A DNA stretch of 64,000 nt, taken from positions 124,001 to 188,000 of IMG/VR virus record IMGVR_UViG_3300026521_000471; one strand, given 5' to 3'. Both the position numbers and the translations under genes were made by a program. The notes beneath the pieces are model-generated. The model did no database searches, had not been told where the DNA came from, and saw only the letters and a list, made by a program, of their open reading frames with translations. Positions 6,486-26,551 of this stretch are shown one piece after another. How positions within the stretch are numbered: the stretch's first letter is position 1; the number at the start of each line of letters is the position of its first letter.

Positions 6486-7379
6486 ATGACAATAGCATTT
6501 ATTTCGGATATTCATCTTGATTTTTGGATACCTATAAAATTAAATGGAACTAAAGAAGATTTACGATTAGACAACTTTATATCAAACACTTTAAAACCGA
6601 TAAAAGCTGATGTACTCATTATCGGTGGTGACAATTCCCACTATAATCAACAATTTAAAAAACTCCTTATAAAACTAGCAGAATTAAAATTATTTAAAAA
6701 GATAATTATTACTTATGGTAATCATGATATGTATTTAGTTTCAAATAAACAAATACACGATTATAAAATTTCGATCAATAAAATCACAGAAATGAAAAAA
6801 ATATGTACTGATATTGATACTGTTGAATTTTTAGATGGTAATATAATTGAGGTAGATGGAATAAAAATCGGAGGTTGTGCTATGTGGTATGATTATTCAT
6901 ATGCTAAAAAATTCTTTAATATGAATGATTTCCATATGCTACAAAAATGGAAACAGGTTATGAATGACGCCAACTATATTTATGGTACAGATCACTTAGG
7001 GTTAAATGAAGTTAGATCAATGTATTCATATGGAAAAACTAAAATTTATACTTTTGATCCATTGCTATTTTTTGAATCGGAAAAAGATAAACTATTAAAA
7101 ATAATAGATAAGGTAGATATTTTTGTTTCGCATTTTGGTCCAGCTATACCACCCAATTTGGAATCAAAATATATGAATATTGATACAGGTTTTTATTATT
7201 TTGATGGCGAACATTATCTTTGGGGTGAAAAAGCACCTAAATTATGGATTTTTGGACATACTCATACAAAATATGAATGGAAAGTTAATAATACATGGAT
7301 GGTATCAAATCCATTAGGATATAAATCTGAAAATACTGGAACATCTATTGATATAATAGAGTTAGACGACCTTTATTAA
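6486..7379 (+). CDS. calcineurin-like metallophosphoesterase
   Basis: SDIH, GGD, GNHD, SH and FGHTH motifs. Confidence 0.85.
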   Translation: MTIAFISDIHLDFWIPIKLNGTKEDLRLDNFISNTLKPIKADVLIIGGDNSHYNQQFKKLLIKLAELKLFKKIIITYGNHDMYLVSNKQIHDYKISINKITEMKKICTDIDTVEFLDGNIIEVDGIKIGGCAMWYDYSYAKKFFNMNDFHMLQKWKQVMNDANYIYGTDHLGLNEVRSMYSYGKTKIYTFDPLLFFESEKDKLLKIIDKVDIFVSHFGPAIPPNLESKYMNIDTGFYYFDGEHYLWGEKAPKLWIFGHTHTKYEWKVNNTWMVSNPLGYKSENTGTSIDIIELDDLY

Positions 7380-7382
7380 ATA

Positions 7383-7404
7383 TTAAGTTATATTTAGATA
7401 TAAT
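7383..7404 (+). promoter_or_regulatory. host sigma70-type promoter WTAAG-N11-TATAAT (representative site)
   Basis: Identical spacing at 6442, 7383, 11745, 12907, 26739 (TATTAT variant), 30036, 41538, 48320, 51292, 55834 and 58079, each just upstream of a gene start. Confidence 0.75.
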
Positions 7405-7433
7405 TATAATATTAAAATAAAAAGGTATTATAT

Positions 7434-16328: not shown

Positions 16329-17381
16329 ATGGGATGTTGGAATGAAACATGTGGACTCTCACAAAAATCTATTAGTTATGGTGAAGCAGTATATGCCGTA
16401 ATCATTCTAAATGAAAATGCAGTATATAAATCATGCTATGCTAATGGAATGGCTAGACCTTTTTCTTTTTTAATAGAAGGAACCTATGATGATTATGGCT
16501 CTATCGAAAATATTAAAGATACATTTGCAGCAAAATCTTTAGTTTTATTATTCAATGATCTAATAAATGAAAATAAACTTATTATATCGGATGAAGTTAT
16601 GAATCAGAATTACTTTAATAATGAAGAAATTGGCTATGATGGTAAATACTTTGCCCATCCAGAAGCAATTTTTAAATTTATTGAAAGAGGGTATCTAAGC
16701 CTAAGTACAAATTCTTTCGACGGTGGAAAAAATGAACAAACATTTTCTTTTACTCTTTTTGATTGTGATGCATATGATGCCATGAAAGAAGTAATTGAAT
16801 ATAGAGAAGTAAAATATATAGATCTTCAATATGATGTACAAGAATTTTTAAATACCCTATTAAACAAAAATAATATCAATTTAAATAAGGCTGAAATAAG
16901 AGAAAAATTAAAAGATGACAATTTGAGTGATGAAGAAAAAGATATACTTATTGAACTTTTATTCCAGGACCGTAATTCATTATGGGGTGGTGAGAAATTA
17001 AAGTCTAAAGCATCTAAATGGGGAAACATGTTGTCATATTTAAGAAGTTATGAAAGTGTTAATCGAGATGCATTTAATAAACTAGAAAAAATAGTAAGAT
17101 CAACATATAATCAAAATAACAATAACGACATCAATACAACTATATCAGATTTTATAATAACACTCTTGATATTTAATACTTTTAGAAAATCTTGGGCACC
17201 ACAAGGTCATGCATCACAGGATGATAATCTTATTGAAATAATTGATTTCACAGAACGGTTTTTAAGAAAATTATACAAGAAGAGAGATATTTTAAAAGAA
17301 GAAGGCTACTATGAAGATGAAAATGAAGTTATAGGTAGTGTTTCAATATTAGATGAAAAGAAATTACTATGCAATTCGTAA
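16329..17381 (+). CDS. hypothetical protein (MGCWNETC N-terminus)
   Basis: 350-aa ORF with RBS. Confidence 0.65.
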   Translation: MGCWNETCGLSQKSISYGEAVYAVIILNENAVYKSCYANGMARPFSFLIEGTYDDYGSIENIKDTFAAKSLVLLFNDLINENKLIISDEVMNQNYFNNEEIGYDGKYFAHPEAIFKFIERGYLSLSTNSFDGGKNEQTFSFTLFDCDAYDAMKEVIEYREVKYIDLQYDVQEFLNTLLNKNNINLNKAEIREKLKDDNLSDEEKDILIELLFQDRNSLWGGEKLKSKASKWGNMLSYLRSYESVNRDAFNKLEKIVRSTYNQNNNNDINTTISDFIITLLIFNTFRKSWAPQGHASQDDNLIEIIDFTERFLRKLYKKRDILKEEGYYEDENEVIGSVSILDEKKLLCNS

Positions 17382-17866
17382 ATGTATTTGACTTGGATTG
17401 TACCCTAATAGATAGTTCACACAGAATAAATAAATTTGGAGATCCAAAAAAAGGTCTAGATTTAGACTATTGGATCGACCATTCAATATCAGAATTCATA
17501 AATAAAGATAAGCTCTTACCTTTAGTAGAAGTTTTTCAAGAATTTAAGAAAACAAATTTTTCAAACATCGCTGTAACTGCAAGAGAAATGACTAACGCAG
17601 ATTATGAATTTTTAAAACAGCACGATTTACATTTTGATATGATATTACATAGAGAAGATAGCGTTGAATTAGATCACATACTTAAAAGTAGAAAATTAGA
17701 TGAATTATTTGCATCCACAAACTTAAAGCCTTTTTTAGCGTTTGATGATAAAGAAGAGAATTTAGAAATATTTAAAAAATTTGGTTTTACATGTATTAAT
17801 GCTATCGAAATTAATACTATTATGTTAGGCATATCATTAAAATGCAATGCAGAAAAAAATAATTGA
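17369..17866 (+). CDS. HAD-family phosphatase (PseT 3'-phosphatase-like)
   Basis: FDLDCTL motif I, VTAR motif II, K, FDD motif IV. Confidence 0.75.
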   Translation: MQFVNVFDLDCTLIDSSHRINKFGDPKKGLDLDYWIDHSISEFINKDKLLPLVEVFQEFKKTNFSNIAVTAREMTNADYEFLKQHDLHFDMILHREDSVELDHILKSRKLDELFASTNLKPFLAFDDKEENLEIFKKFGFTCINAIEINTIMLGISLKCNAEKNN

Positions 17867-17890
17867 AATAGGATCTTCCCTATTTCAATT
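17861..17890. terminator. bidirectional terminator hairpin
   Basis: AATTGAAATAGG / CCTATTTCAATT 12-bp inverted repeat between convergent genes. Confidence 0.75.
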
Positions 17891-17925
17891 TTTTCCTTTT
17901 TATAGGCAAGGTAAAGGTGTCCACC

Positions 17926-18228
17926 TTATTCTTTTGAAAAAATTCGTTCTGCAAATTGAGTAACAGGTCCTCTAAGAACTTTTTGTAATTCTATACCAAA
18001 TAGATTTACTTCTTCATGTTCTTCTTTTGTAGCATTTAAAAGGGTGGTTAAACCATTAGTATATCTTGTAATATACTGATTATCAATCTGTCTATTTGAA
18101 CCTAATACAATAACTTTACAAGAAGAATCAATACGACTTAATACTAGTTGTAATGTAGAATTACTCATATTTTGAGCTTCATCAATAATTACAATAGCAT
18201 CTGAAAGTGTTCGACCTCTCATACTACC
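17926..18228 (-). pseudogene. orphaned duplicate of the phoH 3' end
   Basis: (GS)MRGRTLSDAIVIIDEAQN...IFSKE closely matches the last ~100 aa of 19010-20437; similarity stops at the Gly codon near 18228. Confidence 0.85.
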
Positions 18229-18279
18229 AAAACTTTTTAATAATTGTATAAATAATATAAAAGGATTAAGGACAAATTC

Positions 18280-19017
18280 ATGATATATACCATATATAAA
18301 ATCACAAATAAACTAAATAATAAAATATATATAGGAGCCCACACAACAGAGGACATTTCCGACAATTATATGGGTTCGGGAGCAATATTAAAAAAAGCTA
18401 TTGAAAAATATGGGTTAGATAATTTTTATAAAGAGGTGTTATATACGTTTACAACCGAAGAAGAAATGTATTTAAAAGAAGCAGAGTTAGTTAATGAAGA
18501 ATTTATTCAACGAGATGATACTTATAATTTAAAGGTCGGTGGATATGGAGGATGGTCTTATATTAACGAAAATAAATTAAATAATACAGAAAAAAATAGA
18601 TTATCAAGATTAAAAAATTTGGAAAAAGCAAATGAAGCAAATAAAAAATTAGTTGCTGAAGGGAAGCATAGAAAAGGCTTTAAGATTAGTGCGGAAACAA
18701 AATTGAAAATGTCGTTAAATAAGAATCGGTCATTTCCTGGCGAAAAAAACCCTCAATATGGGAAAAAATGCGTTAATAAAAATGGTAAAAATTTGATGAT
18801 ATTAAAAGAGGAAGTAAATGACTATATTAAAAAAGGTTGGGAGTTAGGTCAAATACAAAATAAACCAGATACCAAAGGAAATAAAAATGCGTCCTTTGGT
18901 AAAAGCTGGTACACAAATGGTGAAGAAAGTAAATTATTAAGCCAAGAAGAGTCAATTAAATACATTTCTTTAGGTTGGACAAAGGGTAGAACATTGAAAA
19001 AAAGTAAGACTAGCTAG
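18280..19017 (+). mobile_element. free-standing GIY-YIG (Seg-like) homing endonuclease
   Basis: TIYKITN..KIYIGAH, YMGSG, YNLKVGG; NUMOD-like C-terminal repeats; own TATAAATA promoter at 18247. Confidence 0.85.
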
Positions 19018-19024
19018 TCTTACT
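19003..19024. repeat. perfect 22-bp palindrome carrying the stop codons of both convergent genes
   Basis: AGTAAGACTAGCTAGTCTTACT; both proteins end S-K-T-S-stop. Confidence 0.9.
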
Positions 19025-20437
19025 AAAAATTTTTTCCGCAAATGTTGTTATAGGTCCTCTTAATACTTTCTGTAATTCTATACCGAATAAACTTACTTCT
19101 TCATGTTCTTCTTTTGTAGCATTTAAAAGTGCAGTCAAACCATTCGTATATTTGGTAATATATTGATTATCGATTTGTCTATTTGAACCCAATACAACAA
19201 CTTTACAAGAAGAATCAACCCTAGTCAATGTTAGTTGTAGTGTACTAGTACTCATATTTTGAGCTTCATCAATAATTACAATAGCATTAGATAAAGTTCT
19301 TCCGCGAAGTGCACCAGTCCACATAGTTTCAACTTGATAACGTTCTACTAACTCTTGGACTTTTTCAGATATTCGTTCTTCAGTTACAGTTTCTCCCTTA
19401 CCAGGCTTATTTTCTTTTGATTTTTTTAACATTTGACCCGCAATATAAGCAAGAGTATCAAATAATGGGAAATTATATATCTCAAATTTTGCTTCATTCG
19501 TTGAAAGATAACCTACATCTTCTCCTTTAGCTAACGATTCAACTGAGTTTCTAATATAGACTATACGTTGATATTCTTTACACTTAATCAATTCCATTGC
19601 TGCACTAATAGCTAAAAGGGTTTTACCAGAACCAGCTTTAGCTTCAGCTACAACGATATTATAATGATTATTAAGTAATGCATTACTAAAAAATAATTGT
19701 TCGGCATTCATAGGATTTACATTTTGTTTACGTAATTCTTTTTCATCTAAAAATTGTATTTTATTATTAATTATATAAGCAAGTATTTTTTGCCCGTCTT
19801 TATTAAAAATATAATTAAAATTATTTGGTTTGTGTTCGGAGTTAAAATCTAAAATATTATCTCCCTCTCGAACTTCCTGTCCATTTAAATTAATTTCTTT
19901 AATAAAATCTAAAGAAATCTCTTTATTTCCTAAATTTAATGGTTCTGTCTCCAGTCCTAAACTTATAGCTCTTGTTCTAGCCATCACATCTAATGATATA
20001 AATTTAATATGTTCATAATTTATATCCTCTGTATTATGTATTAAATCCAATGTAATTTCTAAGATCTTTCTATCATTTCTTATACTATTACTCGTATTAT
20101 CAGAATCAGCTTTATATACTTCCTTGGATATAATATGAATAACAGTATCATCTACTTTAGTTTCGATTAAAACTATATCAAATGATTTATTGTTGTCGCT
20201 ATTTGCTTTTATAACTCTTTTATCTTTAATTTCCGCATCAAATAACATTCTACCGAACTCTCTGGCTTGGAAATTTATTTCATCCCAACCACTTTTTTTA
20301 CTATCTATTTCATCTAATACTGTTTCTGGTAAAATAATAAGATTTTTACCATTATCCGATAAAGTGAATAGATTTTTTGCGTCGTCAAGTATTATATTTG
20401 TATCTAAACAAAATACTTTTTCAAATTTTTTAGTCAT
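19010..20437 (-). CDS. phoH: PIN-PhoH ATPase
   Basis: N-terminal PIN (LDTNIILD, VLDEID, NDRKIL); AKAGSGKT; RGRTL; IIDEAQN. Confidence 0.9.
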   Translation of the reverse strand: MTKKFEKVFCLDTNIILDDAKNLFTLSDNGKNLIILPETVLDEIDSKKSGWDEINFQAREFGRMLFDAEIKDKRVIKANSDNNKSFDIVLIETKVDDTVIHIISKEVYKADSDNTSNSIRNDRKILEITLDLIHNTEDINYEHIKFISLDVMARTRAISLGLETEPLNLGNKEISLDFIKEINLNGQEVREGDNILDFNSEHKPNNFNYIFNKDGQKILAYIINNKIQFLDEKELRKQNVNPMNAEQLFFSNALLNNHYNIVVAEAKAGSGKTLLAISAAMELIKCKEYQRIVYIRNSVESLAKGEDVGYLSTNEAKFEIYNFPLFDTLAYIAGQMLKKSKENKPGKGETVTEERISEKVQELVERYQVETMWTGALRGRTLSNAIVIIDEAQNMSTSTLQLTLTRVDSSCKVVVLGSNRQIDNQYITKYTNGLTALLNATKEEHEEVSLFGIELQKVLRGPITTFAEKIFSKTS

Positions 20438-20604
20438 AAATAAAGTCTCCTTTTTGACATTTAAACGGATAGGAATAATTCCAATCTCATTTTTATTTAT
20501 GAAATATTTCCCCCACTTACACCTTTTTCAAATATTTAACTATTAACAAACAATAAAAATTACTACGTACACCATATAAATAAAAAGAAAATAAGGCATT
20601 AAAA

Positions 20605-21048
20605 ATGAAAATAAGAAATATTCTATTAGAAGCTAAAAAAAGAAGATGGAAAGGTCTAAATAATCATATCGTAGAAATTTTACCAAATAAAACGGGTTTC
20701 GGAACTGGTTCTGGTAAGTTTAGAATTAATAAAAAAGATGATAATGAAATTTGGACAATAAAAGTTGGACCAAATAGTACAAAATATTATATATATCTTG
20801 GTATAAGTCCTAATGCTAAAAAAATTGGATTTCGTATCCAGCCAAATAAAATAAATAGTGGAGTTGATGGTCATAAATTATTTAACAAAATTAAAAAATT
20901 AACAGATACTTTCAATAATCAAATAATTTATCCAAAAAATAATAATACTGTAAATGAAGATTTTATTGATGAATTAATTAAATTAAATACTAATTTGTTT
21001 AATGAAATCAATAAAGCTGTGATAGATTTAAAAGAAAACTTTAAATAA
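20605..21048 (+). CDS. late basic hypothetical protein (MKIRNILLE leader)
   Basis: TATAAATA at 20575. Confidence 0.6.
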   Translation: MKIRNILLEAKKRRWKGLNNHIVEILPNKTGFGTGSGKFRINKKDDNEIWTIKVGPNSTKYYIYLGISPNAKKIGFRIQPNKINSGVDGHKLFNKIKKLTDTFNNQIIYPKNNNTVNEDFIDELIKLNTNLFNEINKAVIDLKENFK

Positions 21049-21053
21049 TTTTT

Positions 21054-22463
21054 TTATTTAAAGTTTTTTAATTCTATTTTTTCAACCTCAAATGGGTATT
21101 GAGCCTCTTTATAAAAATCTTTTCTAGATTTTATATGTTTTTTATCATATTTTAAATTAGATGTTATATCAATTACTGTAACATGTTCTTTCTGTCCAGA
21201 TTTTCTTCTAAGCCCTCTTCCAATCGATTGTATAACTTTTGTAAAACTTTTTCCAGGTGTAGGTGCAAGAATTAAGTTGTTAATATGTACAATATCAATT
21301 CCAGTACTAAGTAATGAATATGTTCCAACTGTTACTAAATTACCACCATAAACGAATTCATTAAATTTCTCTTGTCTTTTATCAACCGTTAATTTTGAAC
21401 TAATATAACCACACTCTAGAAATTCTGATAAATCTTCAGCCGGATCTATATTCTTCATCAATATCAATGTGTTACCTTCTAATGAATCAACAATGGCTTT
21501 CATTAATTTTTGAAACATTTCATTACTTTGTAAAAAAACAGTCTCTTCATGCCAGTCAATAAATGAGCCTAAATATTCTTTAGGGTAAACCAATTCAAAA
21601 ATATTAATATCTATTGAAGATAATATATTTCTCTTTTGTAATTCATGTGCTTTTACATCATAAACCACAGGACCAAAACCAGCTGTTAAATTAGCTTTGT
21701 CTAAAGGATCTTTTGGCACAGTACCCGTCAAACCTATTCTCAAATATGAATTTTTTGCCTCATTCATAATTTGTTGAGCTACATATGCTTTAGCGCCATG
21801 TACTTCATCCCATATCACACATTCAAAATCTCGTATAAAATGTTTATTATTTTGTAGTGTTTGCCAAGTAGCCACAATATTAATTTCATTATCTTTTTTA
21901 CCACTACCAAACATACCGACAGGAATATCAAATTGTTTTATATAATCAAATGTCTGTTTTAACAATGATGATGATGGTACAATGACAATCGTTTTCATAT
22001 TTAGTTTATTGGCATATTTAACGATAGCTGATGTCAATAAGGTATTATGATGAACTGTTCCATTTGCTATTTGATATAAATGATTTTCAGAATTAACTTC
22101 GACATCATATAATAAACCCTGTTCATTTAGATTCTCTATATTTGTAACTACTGCCATATGTTTTTCATCAACATTATATAATCTATCACCTATAGACAAT
22201 TCATTGACTTTTTTTATAGTTTGGTCATCTAACATTAAGATATGATTATCAGTAGTTATTATATTCTCTATTGCATCAATCTCTAGCTTTATTAAATTAT
22301 CCTCTTTTACAATAAGACCTTTAATATCAACCCATTTACCGACCTCATCTTGAATTTGAATTGGTGTACGTTGAAAATATTCCTCATCTCTACGAAATGC
22401 AATATCTTCTTCTAACGATATTATTTTAAATAATTGTTCAAAAGTTAATTCTATTTCTTCCAT
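21054..22463 (-). CDS. uvsW: UvsW-like SF2 helicase, C-terminal half, preceded by split-intein IntC (aa 1-140)
   Basis: Intein blocks B (TTDNH), F (YDVEV) and G (VHHN/T); then helicase motifs Ia VPSSSL, DEVH, GLTGT, TGIDI, QSIGRGLR; no Walker A lysine. Confidence 0.9.
   Translation of the reverse strand: MEEIELTFEQLFKIISLEEDIAFRRDEEYFQRTPIQIQDEVGKWVDIKGLIVKEDNLIKLEIDAIENIITTDNHILMLDDQTIKKVNELSIGDRLYNVDEKHMAVVTNIENLNEQGLLYDVEVNSENHLYQIANGTVHHNTLLTSAIVKYANKLNMKTIVIVPSSSLLKQTFDYIKQFDIPVGMFGSGKKDNEINIVATWQTLQNNKHFIRDFECVIWDEVHGAKAYVAQQIMNEAKNSYLRIGLTGTVPKDPLDKANLTAGFGPVVYDVKAHELQKRNILSSIDINIFELVYPKEYLGSFIDWHEETVFLQSNEMFQKLMKAIVDSLEGNTLILMKNIDPAEDLSEFLECGYISSKLTVDKRQEKFNEFVYGGNLVTVGTYSLLSTGIDIVHINNLILAPTPGKSFTKVIQSIGRGLRRKSGQKEHVTVIDITSNLKYDKKHIKSRKDFYKEAQYPFEVEKIELKNFK
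22044..22463 (-). mobile_element. split intein C-fragment (140 aa, no endonuclease)
   Basis: Ends His-Asn at 22044, followed by Thr+1; lacks block A. Confidence 0.88.
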
Positions 22464-24541: not shown

Positions 24542-25141
24542 TCAATTATAAGGTTCTATATTAAATTCTTCAAATAGAACCTTAAGCCCAACAGTTAATT
24601 TTCCCGACTTTGGAAAGTCAGGAAATTTTTTCTTTCGTCCACTCAATCCATATTCTTTTTTTAATTTATTATAATTTCGTTTAGATACCTTTTGAGCTTT
24701 TGGTTCTTCTGATGGATGTATATAAAAATTTCCTTCTTCATCTTGATATGCACCAGCTTCTAAATAATCTGCTAAATTTCGTAAAAAATCTGGCAAACTG
24801 ATCGGGTGGTTAGTTTCATCTGCTCCGAAATATCTTTTCCAGTTATTTGTGATTTTTCCTTCCATTGCATTTGCCCTAAACTCTAAAGCATTTCTAATCG
24901 TACCTTTTTGTTCAGAACATTCTTCATTTTTTAATTTATGAATATGATCTAATACCATTTTATCGAGTTCAACCTCAATTCCTAATAATGGACATATTTT
25001 ATTATTTTCTAACCATAATTTTTCTTTTAATTCTTTTATATTTTTCTGTTTTAATTGTATTAATTGTTTCATAGTTTTATTTATATGATAAAAATTGTAA
25101 AATTGATATAAAAAAAATAAGGTTTTGTAATGGATGAGCAA
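24542..25141 (-). CDS. recombination endonuclease VII-like nuclease (true start probably 25072)
   Basis: CPLLG..VLDHIH..GTIRNAL..ANAMEGKI His-Me finger pattern. Confidence 0.7.
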   Translation of the reverse strand: MLIHYKTLFFLYQFYNFYHINKTMKQLIQLKQKNIKELKEKLWLENNKICPLLGIEVELDKMVLDHIHKLKNEECSEQKGTIRNALEFRANAMEGKITNNWKRYFGADETNHPISLPDFLRNLADYLEAGAYQDEEGNFYIHPSEEPKAQKVSKRNYNKLKKEYGLSGRKKKFPDFPKSGKLTVGLKVLFEEFNIEPYN

Positions 25142-26551
25142 ATAGATGATACAGAATATGAAGACGCTTTAGCCGAATTAGAGGCAGAATCATCTTCAAA
25201 AAAGAAAAAGAAGAAAAAAACAGTTGAACATTCAGAAGGCAAACTATTAGATATTGAAGATAAAGAACGAATTTTACTTGCTCAACTTATTAATAACCCA
25301 GAATTATTTGTTAAAGGTATAACTTTTCTAGATAAAGATTTCTTTGAATCAAAAATTAATAAATTAATTGTGGAATTTATGATTGATTATTATGATTTAT
25401 ATAAAAGTATCCCGCCTGAAGATGCTATACTATTAGAATTAAATTTAGATAACGTACATGATGATTGGTTAGATATAAATAAACCTTGGCCAACAGAGTA
25501 TCTTGAAGACTATTTAAATGCGTTTATAAAAAATATGAGTATGAAAGGTGCTATCGAAGATAGTATTGAATTACTAGAAGAAGAAGATTATGGAACTATT
25601 GAGAAGAAGATTAAAGATGCTGTAAACGTTGATATTGATACAAAGTTAGGTGTAACCATAGATACTGATAAAGATAATTTTCGTGACTTATTTAAAATGC
25701 TAACATCAACTGAAGCTACAATTCCAACTGGATGGTGGAACGTAGATGATAAATTAGATGGTGGTGTAACAATACCAAGTTTAAATTATTTATTAGCTAA
25801 ATCTGGTGGTGGTAAATCAATAGGTTTAATAAATTTAGCATGGAATTATATTCAGATGAAAAGGGATGTTATTTATATTTCTCTAGAACTAAAGGAAGAG
25901 AAAATCATGAAGAGGTATATAACCCACTCAACTAAAATTCCGACCCATCAAATTGAAAAGTCTGAGATGGAAATTTATAACCATCTAAAGAAATGTGATA
26001 ATAAGGGGTATGGTCGATTTACTGTTCATTTCTATCAACCCAATACACTAAGTGCAATGAAGTTGGAATTATTTGTAAGAAATTATTTACAAAAATATAA
26101 TACAGTACCTATTATTATTCTAGATTATGCAGGTTTAATGACACCAAATGGTAAAAATTGGCAAGGTATGTTTGAAAAAGATAAATATGTTTCTGAAGAA
26201 TTAAGAGCTGTGGCAACGTTATTTGATACGATCGTTTGGACAGCAGACCAATATAATAGATGTATATCATTTGGTGAACAGGTAATAACACCGAATGGTA
26301 AAAAAAATATTGAAGATGTTGAAATAGGGGATAAAGTTCTTGGGGGCAATAATAGTTATCGTACTGTAACAGCGATAACGGAGCCGGAAGAACAAGAAGT
26401 ATATAAAATTACTTTAAAAAGTGGAAAAACTATCAAAGTATCAGGAAGACATATCTTCCCAAAAGTTTTAGAAGATGGGAAATTAGTAGAAGATTGCATA
26501 TTATCTTCATTAAGTATAGGTGACAAGTTGGTGGTCTCCGATAAAATATGA
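25130..26551 (+). CDS. T4 gp41/DnaB-like replicative helicase, N-terminal part, ending in split-intein IntN
   Basis: AKSGGGKS Walker A, YISLEL, IILDYAGLM, WTADQYNR, then CISFGEQV intein block A. Confidence 0.9.
   Translation: MDEQIDDTEYEDALAELEAESSSKKKKKKKTVEHSEGKLLDIEDKERILLAQLINNPELFVKGITFLDKDFFESKINKLIVEFMIDYYDLYKSIPPEDAILLELNLDNVHDDWLDINKPWPTEYLEDYLNAFIKNMSMKGAIEDSIELLEEEDYGTIEKKIKDAVNVDIDTKLGVTIDTDKDNFRDLFKMLTSTEATIPTGWWNVDDKLDGGVTIPSLNYLLAKSGGGKSIGLINLAWNYIQMKRDVIYISLELKEEKIMKRYITHSTKIPTHQIEKSEMEIYNHLKKCDNKGYGRFTVHFYQPNTLSAMKLELFVRNYLQKYNTVPIIILDYAGLMTPNGKNWQGMFEKDKYVSEELRAVATLFDTIVWTADQYNRCISFGEQVITPNGKKNIEDVEIGDKVLGGNNSYRTVTAITEPEEQEVYKITLKSGKTIKVSGRHIFPKVLEDGKLVEDCILSSLSIGDKLVVSDKI
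26261..26548 (+). mobile_element. split intein N-fragment (96 aa)
   Basis: Cys1 block A; IEDVEIGDKV; block B VSGRHIF; ends LSIGDKLVV with no block F or G. Confidence 0.88.

What the first reader, a model, noticed from the sequence alone, without database searches (positions are those of the whole stretch)
17926..20437. Homing endonuclease cassette that appears to have supplied a replacement 3' end for phoH
Seen on the minus strand: complete phoH, then an antisense GIY-YIG gene, then an orphan copy of the last ~100 phoH codons beginning at the conserved G-x-x-R-G-R-T motif (GSMRGRT versus GALRGRT). The two copies differ at many positions. Inference: the element cut at the RGRT-coding site and inserted with a cleavage-resistant phoH 3' end, displacing the original. 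This keeps the target gene intact without an intron or intein and predicts the cut site near 18228/19315.
Basis: partly seen in the sequence, partly recalled or inferred. Interest (0 to 1): 0.62.

Follow-up and report, generated by a model that had tools for sequence, protein, structure and literature searches.

The report
Endonuclease cassette replaced phoH 3' end
In this uncultured hydrothermal-vent phage a selfish endonuclease gene sits inside phoH and brought a foreign copy of the gene's last 100 codons, so phoH stays whole while its original end is left behind as an orphan; this is known from fungal mitochondria, but I found no phage report.

Summary
The window holds phoH (19010-20437, minus), an antisense GIY-YIG endonuclease gene (18280-19017, plus) and an orphan of phoH codons 375-473 (17926-18228, minus).

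- **Relative without the insert:** a 221-kb relative (L004) has phoH directly followed by the next gene.
- **The orphan is native:** it is 92.9% identical in DNA to that relative's 3' end (dS 0.35, as for the native 5' part). The in-gene 3' end is only 78.1% identical (dS 1.10).
- **Sharp junctions:** identity to the relative drops abruptly at a TGGT that also starts the orphan.
- **Empty site:** a contig from another run, about 98.5% identical, joins 19313 to 18225 and skips exactly 1087 bases.
- **Recurrence:** the endonuclease subfamily (49-79% identity) lay at a phoH 3' end, or beside a phoH orphan, on every contig examined. Two further cassettes (L007, L184) have orphans. In L007 the 5' part and orphan group together, while the in-gene 3' end groups with another cassette's.

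Cleavage, the exact cut site and resistance of the hybrid allele are inferred, not shown. The architecture matches fungal mitochondrial 'mobile ORF' gene hybrids (Allomyces atp6). Here it is in a phage, with an antisense endonuclease gene preceded by its own putative late-type promoter.

The parts
19313..20437 (-). Native 5' part of phoH (codons 1-375: PIN domain, Walker A half of the PhoH ATPase)
   Evidence: 93.2% DNA identity over the last 900 nt and 359/370 identical residues over the last 370 codons to relative L004; 100% identical over 19334-19423; groups with L004 at 100/100 support.
19010..19312 (-). Foreign, in-frame replacement 3' end of phoH (codons 376-475 plus stop); completes the PhoH domain
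   Evidence: Only 78.1% DNA identity to L004 (dS 1.10, omega 0.11). Unplaced in the 3'-end tree. Pfam PhoH match runs through it, 2-203 of 205.
19313..19316 (-). Left junction: TGGT shared by native and inserted sequence
   Evidence: Identity to L004 falls from 100% to about 75% here. The empty-site contig joins 19313 to 18225 with a 4-nt ambiguity.
18226..19312 (.). The 1087-nt inserted cassette as a whole (equivalently 18230-19316)
   Evidence: Absent from L004 and from the run X6 contig, which 'skips 1087'.
19003..19024 (.). Perfect 9-bp-stem palindrome with T runs on both sides; covers both convergent stop codons; likely bidirectional terminator inside the cassette
   Evidence: Both proteins end in SKTS because the palindrome is read on both strands.
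18280..19017 (+). Free-standing GIY-YIG homing endonuclease gene (245 aa), antisense to phoH
   Evidence: PHROG 314 'homing endonuclease' E 2.3e-45. Weak Pfam hits to SegE_GIY-YIG and NUMOD3, both under their cut-offs. Subfamily profile hits the I-TevI catalytic domain 1MK0, E 0.003. Close homologues lie at a phoH 3' end or beside a phoH orphan on every contig examined.
18247..18262 (+). Conserved TATAAATA-containing 16-mer, 17 nt upstream of the endonuclease ATG; putative T4-type late promoter
   Evidence: The exact 16-mer precedes five of the related endonuclease genes (window, L007, L096, L184, L010 with one mismatch). TATAAATA alone precedes three same-sense ones. The 16-mer is unique in the window. 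TATAAATA is depleted in the window, 19 against 32.6 expected. Promoter function is inferred.
18226..18229 (-). Right junction: TGGT; cassette end meets the displaced native 3' end
17926..18228 (-). Orphan: the displaced native phoH 3' end (codons 375-474 plus stop), still an open frame
   Evidence: 92.9% DNA identity to the L004 3' end, dS 0.353, omega 0.025. These are the values of the native 5' part (dS 0.333, omega 0.041). 0 differences in 41 nt to the empty-site contig.
17861..17890 (.). Native bidirectional terminator between phoH and the convergent dNMPase-like gene, now downstream of the orphan
   Evidence: Its flank is collinear with L004.

Best explanation
A 1087-nt homing cassette has inserted into phoH at codon 375. 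It consists of a foreign, recoded copy of the last 100 phoH codons, a palindromic terminator, an antisense GIY-YIG endonuclease gene with its own putative late-type promoter, and a short remnant of the target site. Most likely course: during co-infection the endonuclease cut an endonuclease-free phoH close to the TGGT at codons 374/375. The upstream end primed repair synthesis on the donor's phoH, copying the donor's 3' end and the endonuclease gene. The downstream end was rejoined through the short target-like stub, or the TGGT microhomology, at the cassette's far end. The recipient's own 3' end therefore survives, displaced, as the orphan. phoH stays a single open frame, so no intron or intein is needed. 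The full target sequence is no longer present at either junction, which should make the carrier immune. Shown: the architecture, the direction of change (orphan native, in-gene end foreign), the precise empty site, and recurrence in other phages. Inferred: nuclease activity, cut position, immunity, and the repair pathway.
For: 1. A relative lacks the cassette. L004 (221 kb, phoH 95% identical) has phoH followed directly by the same dNMPase-like gene, with no endonuclease and no orphan.
2. Polarity. Orphan against L004: 92.9% DNA identity, 19 synonymous and 2 non-synonymous codon differences, dS 0.353. In-gene end against L004: 78.1%, 31 and 14, dS 1.10. Native 5' part: dS 0.333. Orphan + L004 form a clade at 100/99 and the in-gene end falls outside it.
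3. Sharp breakpoint. Identity to L004 is 100% over 19334-19423 and falls right after TGGT, the same 4 nt that precede the orphan.
4. Empty site. A contig of run X6 (8 differences in 535 nt on the phoH side, 0 in 41 nt on the orphan side) joins 19313 to 18225, skipping 1087 nt with a 4-nt ambiguity. Runs of other studies hold pieces of the hybrid allele.
5. Target association. Endonucleases 49-79% identical to this one lay at a phoH 3' end, or beside a phoH orphan, on every contig examined (L007, L010, L013, L016, L096, L097, L098, L184). The 78 more distant IMG/VR relatives examined had no phoH within the fetched flanks.
6. Independent repeats. L007 has phoH, antisense endonuclease and a 97-codon orphan. 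Its 5' part (100/100) and its orphan (97/97) group with the L105 lineage. Its in-gene 3' end groups with the in-gene end of another cassette, L096 (95/93). L184 carries a third endonuclease + orphan pair.
7. No intron or intein. There are no Rfam hits and no Hint domain in phoH.
Against: - No biochemical evidence that the protein cuts DNA, or where.
- The window protein's Pfam GIY-YIG and NUMOD3 scores are below the curated cut-offs, and the catalytic arginine was not located.
- The donor of the in-gene 3' end was not found. Its nearest relative at DNA level is the window's own orphan (81%), and the closest protein match among the top 60 phoH relatives was 85/99.
- No common 'resistant' sequence signature separates endonuclease-bearing from endonuclease-free alleles across the family.
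- Two antisense cassettes (L096, L010) have no orphan, so orphan formation is not obligatory or orphans are lost.
- The orphan's terminal branch is shorter than expected (0.014 against 0.044 for the 5' part). The two copies also share a 39-nt identical block. Some gene conversion between the copies may therefore blur the picture.
- All sequences are metagenomic assemblies.
Confidence: 0.78

Rival explanations
1. Passenger model. The hybrid arose by ordinary, nuclease-independent recombination with a divergent co-infecting phage: homologous on the left, illegitimate on the right. The endonuclease gene was merely carried along.
For: The repair pathway and cleavage are not shown. Phage genomes are mosaic. 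The donor was not found. The right junction rests on only 4 nt of shared sequence.
Against: The same endonuclease subfamily lay at a phoH 3' end or beside a phoH orphan on every contig examined, in unrelated genomic contexts with dNMPase, PDDEXK, TnsA-like or membrane-protein neighbours. Three separate cassettes have orphans that start within about two codons of the same motif. Left and right junctions coincide to within 4 nt.
Confidence: 0.12
2. Ancestral-cassette model. The cassette and duplication are old, and the endonuclease-free relatives (L004, the X6 contig and others) lost them by precise deletion.
For: Direct repeats can mediate deletion. L096 and L010 show that orphans can be absent.
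Against: Deletion between the repeats would most likely cross over in the 39-nt identical block and leave a chimeric 3' end. L004 and X6 are instead orphan-type from the first base after TGGT. Thirteen endonuclease-free relatives spread over the tree have a single phoH. The orphan shows no relaxation of constraint (omega 0.025), which means a recent event.
Confidence: 0.04
3. In-situ duplication model. The phoH 3' end was tandemly duplicated in this lineage, the endonuclease gene later landed between the copies, and the in-gene copy diverged.
For: The in-gene end's closest DNA relative is the orphan itself (81.1%). dS between in-gene end and orphan (0.67) is lower than between in-gene end and L004 (1.10).
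Against: The expressed copy, under purifying selection (omega 0.11-0.19), would have had to gather about three times the synonymous change of the rest of the gene since the split from L004 (dS 1.10 against 0.33-0.35). The X6 empty-site phage is about 98.5% identical in the 5' part, which leaves no time for this. The tree places the in-gene end outside the orphan + L004 clade.
Confidence: 0.03
4. Assembly chimera: the duplication is an artefact of co-assembling two strains.
For: The source is a metagenome assembly. One contig of another phage (L115) breaks exactly at codon 375, which shows that assemblers struggle at this position. No listed contig piece bridged the window's right junction at 18228.
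Against: Contigs of independent studies span the left junction (19249-19858, 0 differences) and the endonuclease/phoH overlap (18354-19122, 1 difference). Runs X1 and X2 hold 96-97% of the stretch's sampled words. The analogous L007 structure was assembled by ENA, JGI and Logan separately, bridging orphan, endonuclease and phoH.
Confidence: 0.03

Closest known systems
Fungal mitochondrial 'mobile ORF' (mORF) gene hybrids: Allomyces macrogynus atp6; Glomus sp. atp6, atp9, cox2, nad3; atp6 and cob C-terminal duplications in Endoconidiophora (PMC3630166, PMC6279837)
   Same: An endonuclease ORF lies inside a protein-coding gene. It comes with a foreign C-terminal segment in frame with the native 5' part. 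The native C-terminus is displaced downstream and is more similar to close relatives than the inserted one is (Glomus: 91-98% against 64-81%; here 92.9% against 78.1%).
   Different: This case is in a phage, not an organelle. The endonuclease gene is antisense, free-standing, and has its own putative promoter and terminator. In the Glomus atp6 and nad3 hybrids the mORF is in phase with the host gene. The target is phoH. An empty-site allele is seen in a ~98.5% identical genome.
Free-standing Seg/Mob GIY-YIG and HNH endonucleases of T4-like phages and 'intronless homing' (SegF, SegG, SegB; Belle et al. 2002, listed; SegB paper listed; mechanism from my own knowledge)
   Same: A free-standing GIY-YIG enzyme of SegE-like type next to the gene it presumably cuts. 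It spreads by double-strand-break repair with co-conversion of flanking markers. T4-style late expression signals are present.
   Different: Seg and Mob genes normally sit between genes, and homing replaces flanking sequence without duplication. Here the element lies inside the coding region and leaves a 100-codon orphan.
Genes-in-pieces made by endonuclease insertion (Aeromonas phage Aeh1 nrdA split by mobE, Friedrich et al. 2007; split gp43, Petrov et al. 2010; both cited)
   Same: A phage homing endonuclease gene is inserted within a conserved enzyme gene, without an intron or intein, and host-gene function is kept.
   Different: In those cases the host gene is split into two polypeptides. 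Here it stays one open frame because a replacement 3' end came with the element.
Intein-interrupted phoH of Campylobacter phages CPt10 and CP21
   Same: The same PIN-PhoH gene family (about 45% identical in the nearest cultured relative, CP220). It is invaded by an endonuclease-bearing element only about 16 codons downstream, at the Walker B DE motif. phoH's conserved ATPase motifs are therefore repeated homing targets.
   Different: In those phages the frame continues from DE into a Cys-started intein-like segment, followed by a TnsA-like endonuclease ORF, an intein end and the native C-terminus. There is no duplicated 3' end. The apparent overlap in my first tblastn was spurious.

Membership tests
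GIY-YIG homing endonucleases (SegE/I-TevI type) | N-terminal ~90-residue GIY-YIG domain with the two Tyr-containing motifs | tested here: met
   Tyr6, Tyr17-Ile-Gly19 and later Glu67 and Asn83 are invariant in the 12-member subfamily alignment A2. The A2 profile aligns over positions 1-88 to the I-TevI catalytic domain 1MK0, E 0.003. PHROG 314 'homing endonuclease' scores E 2.3e-45. The Pfam SegE_GIY-YIG hit is 22.9 bits, under the 25-bit cut-off.
GIY-YIG homing endonucleases (SegE/I-TevI type) | Full catalytic set, including the conserved arginine | tested here: inconclusive
   Glu and Asn candidates are invariant. The I-TevI Arg27 region falls in an insertion of the alignment, so no equivalent could be assigned.
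GIY-YIG homing endonucleases (SegE/I-TevI type) | C-terminal DNA-binding modules (NUMOD3 or similar) | tested here: met
   NUMOD3 scores 17.4 bits in the window protein, under the 20.4-bit cut-off. At the same residues (133-163) it scores 26.1 and 30.3 bits in homologues L010 and L013.
GIY-YIG homing endonucleases (SegE/I-TevI type) | Site-specific cleavage of the element-free allele and resistance of the carrier allele | not testable with these tools
   This needs protein and DNA substrates. The only indirect evidence is the precise empty site and the dense recoding after the junction.
Homing elements in general | Presence/absence polymorphism at one exact site among close relatives | tested here: met
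   L004 (about 91-93% identical) and the X6 contig (about 98.5% identical) lack exactly the 1087 nt.
mORF-type gene hybrid (Allomyces atp6 type) | Foreign C-terminal segment in frame with the native 5' part, endonuclease ORF, then displaced native C-terminus that is closer to relatives | tested here: met
   Criteria as described in PMC3630166.
mORF-type gene hybrid (Allomyces atp6 type) | Endonuclease ORF on the same strand, often in phase with the host gene and co-transcribed with it | tested here: not met
   The ORF is antisense. It is convergent with phoH over a palindromic terminator and has its own putative promoter-like element.
Intron- or intein-borne endonuclease | Self-splicing RNA fold around the ORF, or a Hint domain in frame with the host protein | tested here: not met
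   No Rfam match at E <= 1 in 17300-21000. phoH is one uninterrupted frame with only PIN and PhoH/AAA-type domains.

The most novel reading that the evidence does not exclude
This is a phage counterpart of the mitochondrial mORF: a self-contained, currently active 'end-replacement' homing cassette that circulates among phages from hydrothermal-vent and other aquatic metagenomes, whose hosts are probably Campylobacterota. It would have five parts: a recoded target 3' end, a palindromic terminator, an antisense GIY-YIG gene, a late promoter, and a target-site stub. The stub would do double duty. It would serve as the short homology that closes the repair event and so creates a fresh orphan at each invasion. 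It would also form one arm of a hairpin that hides the endonuclease's ribosome-binding site in read-through transcripts. Orphans would then be short-lived footprints that date invasions.
Probability: 0.45. Interest if true: 0.62.

Novelty: new variant of a known kind. Interest (0 to 1): 0.52.

Why it matters
- **A third route.** It shows how a homing endonuclease gene can sit inside an essential-looking coding region of a phage without destroying it. The known routes are hiding in an intron or intein, and splitting the gene in two.
- **Rare natural resolution.** The window offers the occupied site, the displaced native end, a 93%-identical relative and a 98.5%-identical empty site. Together they place both junctions within a shared 4-nt TGGT and give a concrete target for cleavage assays.
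- **Annotation and marker use.** Short 'PhoH' ORFs next to endonuclease genes can be orphans, not genes. phoH is also used as a marker for phage diversity (cited). A hybrid phoH with a xenologous 3' end, plus a second partial copy, can mislead amplicon and phylogenetic work.

Tried and rejected
- **Megablast of the region against GenBank phages:** no match. The nearest cultured relatives are Campylobacter CP220-like and Vibrio Va1-like phages, at about 45% protein identity.
- **IMG/VR scan with the single phoH protein:** one distant locus only.
- **IMG/VR scan with the endonuclease alignment:** 80 loci, but only L016 had phoH next to the gene. The 35-46% identical relatives were uninformative.
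- **Campylobacter phage lead:** CPt10 and CP21 seemed to carry a duplicated phoH segment. Comparison with CP220 and the ORFs showed an intein-like insertion at the Walker B DE motif with a TnsA-like endonuclease, not a duplication.
- **Donor of the in-gene 3' end:** not found. No protein among the top 60 phoH relatives was closer than 85/99, and no sampled 3' end was closer than 81% in DNA.
- **Shared 'resistant' codon signature in endonuclease-bearing alleles:** none convincing. The first Arg codon is CGN in 3 of 4 carriers, as against a minority of the endonuclease-free alleles, by my reading.
- **L183:** a short PhoH ORF on an 84-kb contig belongs to a differently disrupted phoH (PIN part, 600-nt gap, C-terminal part) and has no cassette.
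- **Literature:** full-text searches for a phage description of this architecture found none. The library lacks most subscription journals, so this is not proof of absence.
- **Tool use:** The large representative-protein search, structure prediction and complex prediction were not needed.
Full report
**What is there**

The window is bases 124001-188000 of a 224-kb IMG/VR virus record with about 27% G+C. Between 17926 and 20437 there are three features.
- phoH, a 475-aa PIN + PhoH ATPase gene, at 19010-20437 on the minus strand.
- A 245-aa ORF at 18280-19017 on the plus strand, convergent with phoH and overlapping its stop by 8 nt.
- A 98-aa minus-strand ORF at 17926-18222. With the two codons before it, this repeats phoH residues 375-473 at 85/99 identity, without gaps or stops.

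The plus-strand ORF is a GIY-YIG homing endonuclease.
- PHROG 314 'homing endonuclease' scores E 2.3e-45.
- A profile of the subfamily aligns to the I-TevI catalytic domain.
- NUMOD3 passes Pfam's cut-off in homologues. The window protein's own Pfam scores fall just under the cut-offs.

**Which copy is the original**

A word search with phoH found a 95% identical protein on a 221.5-kb contig (L004). There phoH is followed directly by the same convergent dNMPase-like gene, with no endonuclease and no orphan.

At DNA level the window aligns to L004 in two blocks: 21100-19025 at 90.9% and 18228-17300 at 90.5%. L004 positions 7123-7413 are used twice.

| Comparison over the 99 shared codons | DNA identity | Synonymous / non-synonymous codon differences | dS | omega |
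|---|---|---|---|---|
| Orphan vs L004 | 92.9% | 19 / 2 | 0.353 | 0.025 |
| In-gene end vs L004 | 78.1% | 31 / 14 | 1.10 | 0.11 |
| Native 5' part (370 codons) vs L004 | n/a | n/a | 0.333 | 0.041 |

The orphan's values equal those of the native 5' part.

A maximum-likelihood tree of 17 3' ends joins orphan and L004 at 100/99 support. The in-gene end stays outside, on its own branch. In the protein alignment, the orphan carries the family's usual residues at most positions where the two copies differ. So the orphan is the phage's own former 3' end, and the end now in use is foreign.

**The junctions**

Identity of the window's phoH to L004 is 100% over 19334-19423. It collapses to about 75% immediately after TGGT at 19316-19313. 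The orphan is preceded by the same TGGT at 18229-18226.

Public runs were searched with the stretch and the contigs of four of them were laid on it.
- Run X6 has a 576-nt contig with 8 differences in 535 nt on the phoH side and none in 41 nt on the orphan side. It joins 19313 to 18225, skipping exactly 1087 nt with a 4-nt ambiguity.
- This is an unoccupied site in a phage about 98.5% identical to the window's.
- Runs from other studies hold the occupied form. One contig spans the left junction (19249-19858) without a difference. No listed piece bridged the right junction.

A secondary deletion is unlikely to give this picture. Recombination between the repeats would be expected in their 39-nt identical block and would leave a chimeric end. 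L004 and X6 are orphan-type from the first base.

The orphan's lack of any relaxed constraint, and the 98.5% empty-site relative, mean the insertion is recent.

**Is it one accident or a habit of this element?**

- Proteins 49-79% identical to the endonuclease form a tight subfamily.
- On every contig of this subfamily that I fetched, the gene lies at a phoH 3' end or, on the short contig L184, beside a phoH orphan.
  - Four carry it antisense to phoH: the window, L007-L009, L096 and L010-L012.
  - L184 carries the endonuclease gene divergent from a phoH orphan on a 1.1-kb contig that holds no full phoH.
  - Four carry it downstream on the same strand: L013-L015, L016, L097 and L098-L099.
  - The genomic neighbourhoods differ.
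- More distant GIY-YIG genes in IMG/VR are not next to phoH.
- Thirteen related phage contigs have a single phoH and no endonuclease.
- L007 repeats the whole architecture with a 97-codon orphan.
  - Its 5' part groups with the endonuclease-free L105 lineage (100/100), and so does its orphan (97/97).
  - Its in-gene 3' end groups with the in-gene end of cassette L096 (95/93).
  - The L007 and L096 cassettes are more alike (77.9% DNA, 78.7% endonuclease protein) than their flanking PDDEXK genes (52.7% protein).
- L184 is a third endonuclease + orphan pair.
- L096 and L010 have no orphan, so orphans are either lost or not always made.

**Anatomy of the cassette**

- The two convergent stop codons lie in a perfect 22-nt palindrome (19003-19024) with T runs on both sides. 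It is a plausible bidirectional terminator, and it explains why both proteins end in SKTS.
- A 16-mer containing TATAAATA, the T4 late-promoter consensus (from my own knowledge), lies 17 nt upstream of the endonuclease ATG.
  - The 16-mer is conserved before five related endonuclease genes, and TATAAATA alone before three more.
  - It is unique in the window. TATAAATA is under-represented there: 19 occurrences against 32.6 expected.
- In L007, L096 and L010 this element sits in the loop of a strong hairpin (z -6.1, -4.0 and -7.2) whose 3' arm covers the ribosome-binding site.
  - The arms differ between the cassettes but remain complementary.
  - The window's leader has no such hairpin (z 0.26).
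- The 5' arm of that hairpin is the antisense of a short phoH-like stub (F-G-x-x-R-G-R) at the cassette's edge.
  - In L007 and L184 the stub is followed by about 15-20 unrelated bases and then the orphan.
  - In the window the stub position merges seamlessly with the orphan.

**Mechanism proposed**

The endonuclease cuts endonuclease-free phoH near codon 375. The upstream end copies the donor's phoH 3' end and the endonuclease gene. The newly made strand is then joined to the downstream end through the stub or the TGGT microhomology, which leaves the recipient's 3' end as an orphan.

Neither junction keeps the complete target. The foreign end differs from the native one in 8 of the first 9 codons, with the RGRTLS codons all changed synonymously.

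These mechanistic steps are inferences from the structure. A nuclease-independent recombination that merely carried the gene along is the main rival. I give it about 0.12, because of the repeated association with one site.

**Comparison with what is known**

- **Fungal mitochondria.** The same design is established there: 'mobile ORF' gene hybrids, first described in Allomyces macrogynus atp6 and then in Glomus atp6, atp9, cox2 and nad3. An inserted foreign C-terminus and an endonuclease ORF displace the native C-terminus, and that native C-terminus is the copy closer to relatives (PMC3630166; also PMC6279837).
- **Differences here.** The host is a phage. The endonuclease gene is antisense and free-standing, with its own putative promoter and terminator. 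In the Glomus atp6 and nad3 hybrids the mORF is in phase with the host gene.
- **T4-type phages.** Free-standing Seg and Mob endonucleases and 'intronless homing' are the nearest phage relatives, but these lie between genes and leave no duplication. Endonuclease insertions that split nrdA or gp43 leave genes in pieces (cited).
- **Campylobacter phages CPt10 and CP21.** These have phoH interrupted about 16 codons further on by an intein-like element with a TnsA-like endonuclease. That is a different solution at nearly the same place.
- **Literature.** I found no phage report of the end-replacement design in the searchable library. That library is incomplete.

**Verdict**

I rate it a new variant of a known kind, of moderate interest. 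It has an unusually clean natural 'before and after' that makes the nuclease's target directly testable.

Noticed in passing
window 19003-19024: A perfect palindrome spans the convergent stop codons of phoH and the endonuclease gene, so both proteins end in SKTS. It scores as a terminator on both strands. This also explains the odd C-terminus of the hybrid PhoH compared with the family's usual SKD.
   Followed up: partly
L007:965-1070, L096:1311-1416, L010:4916-5021 (plus strands); window 18195-18300 for contrast: The endonuclease leaders of three related cassettes fold into strong hairpins (z -4 to -7). These enclose the TATAAATA element and pair with the ribosome-binding site, and the arm sequences differ between cassettes while staying complementary. 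The 5' arm is the antisense of a phoH-like G-x-x-R-G-R stub. The window's leader has no such hairpin.
   Followed up: partly
window 19249-19287 and 18162-18200: The two phoH 3' copies share a 39-nt identical block (Walker B region) although they are only 81% identical overall. The orphan's tree branch is also shorter than that of the native 5' part (0.014 against 0.044). This may reflect short gene conversion between the copies.
   Followed up: no
L115 (contig Ga0256824_10004158), last bases: The contig of another related phage ends exactly at the phoH codon 375 (…M-W-T-G). This is what an assembler would do at a repeat or at a presence/absence polymorphism of the same cassette.
   Followed up: no
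window 21054-22463 (-): The helicase ORF (ResIII + Helicase_C) starts with about 140 residues that hit Intein_splicing weakly and end in VHHN followed by T. This may be the C-terminal half of a split or degenerate intein. The same gene in L004, L005 and L010 shows the same feature.
   Followed up: no
window 25130-26551 (+) and 24542-25141 (-): The DnaB-like helicase ORF runs into an intein-like N-terminal splice region (…NR then CISFGEQ…) and stops. By eye, the neighbouring minus-strand ORF looks like an endonuclease VII/HNH-type nuclease. The region appears rich in homing elements.
   Followed up: no
L180 (Campylobacter phage CPt10) 2998-5973; L181 (CP21): The phoH annotated as a pseudogene 'disrupted' by an endonuclease reads as extein, an intein-like N-part (DE then C-L-H-E-D…), a TnsA-like endonuclease ORF, an intein-like C-part and then extein. 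It may therefore be a split-intein 'fractured gene' rather than a dead gene.
   Followed up: partly
L183 2627-4357: On an 84-kb phage contig phoH appears as a 257-aa PIN ORF, a 600-nt uncalled gap and a 118-aa PhoH C-terminal ORF. This is a different kind of disruption and I did not examine it.
   Followed up: no
window 20575-20582 (+): A second TATAAATA lies 22 nt upstream of the ATG of ORF 20605-21048. The motif is depleted in the window overall (19 against 32.6 expected). Both points fit its use as a promoter element in this phage.
   Followed up: partly
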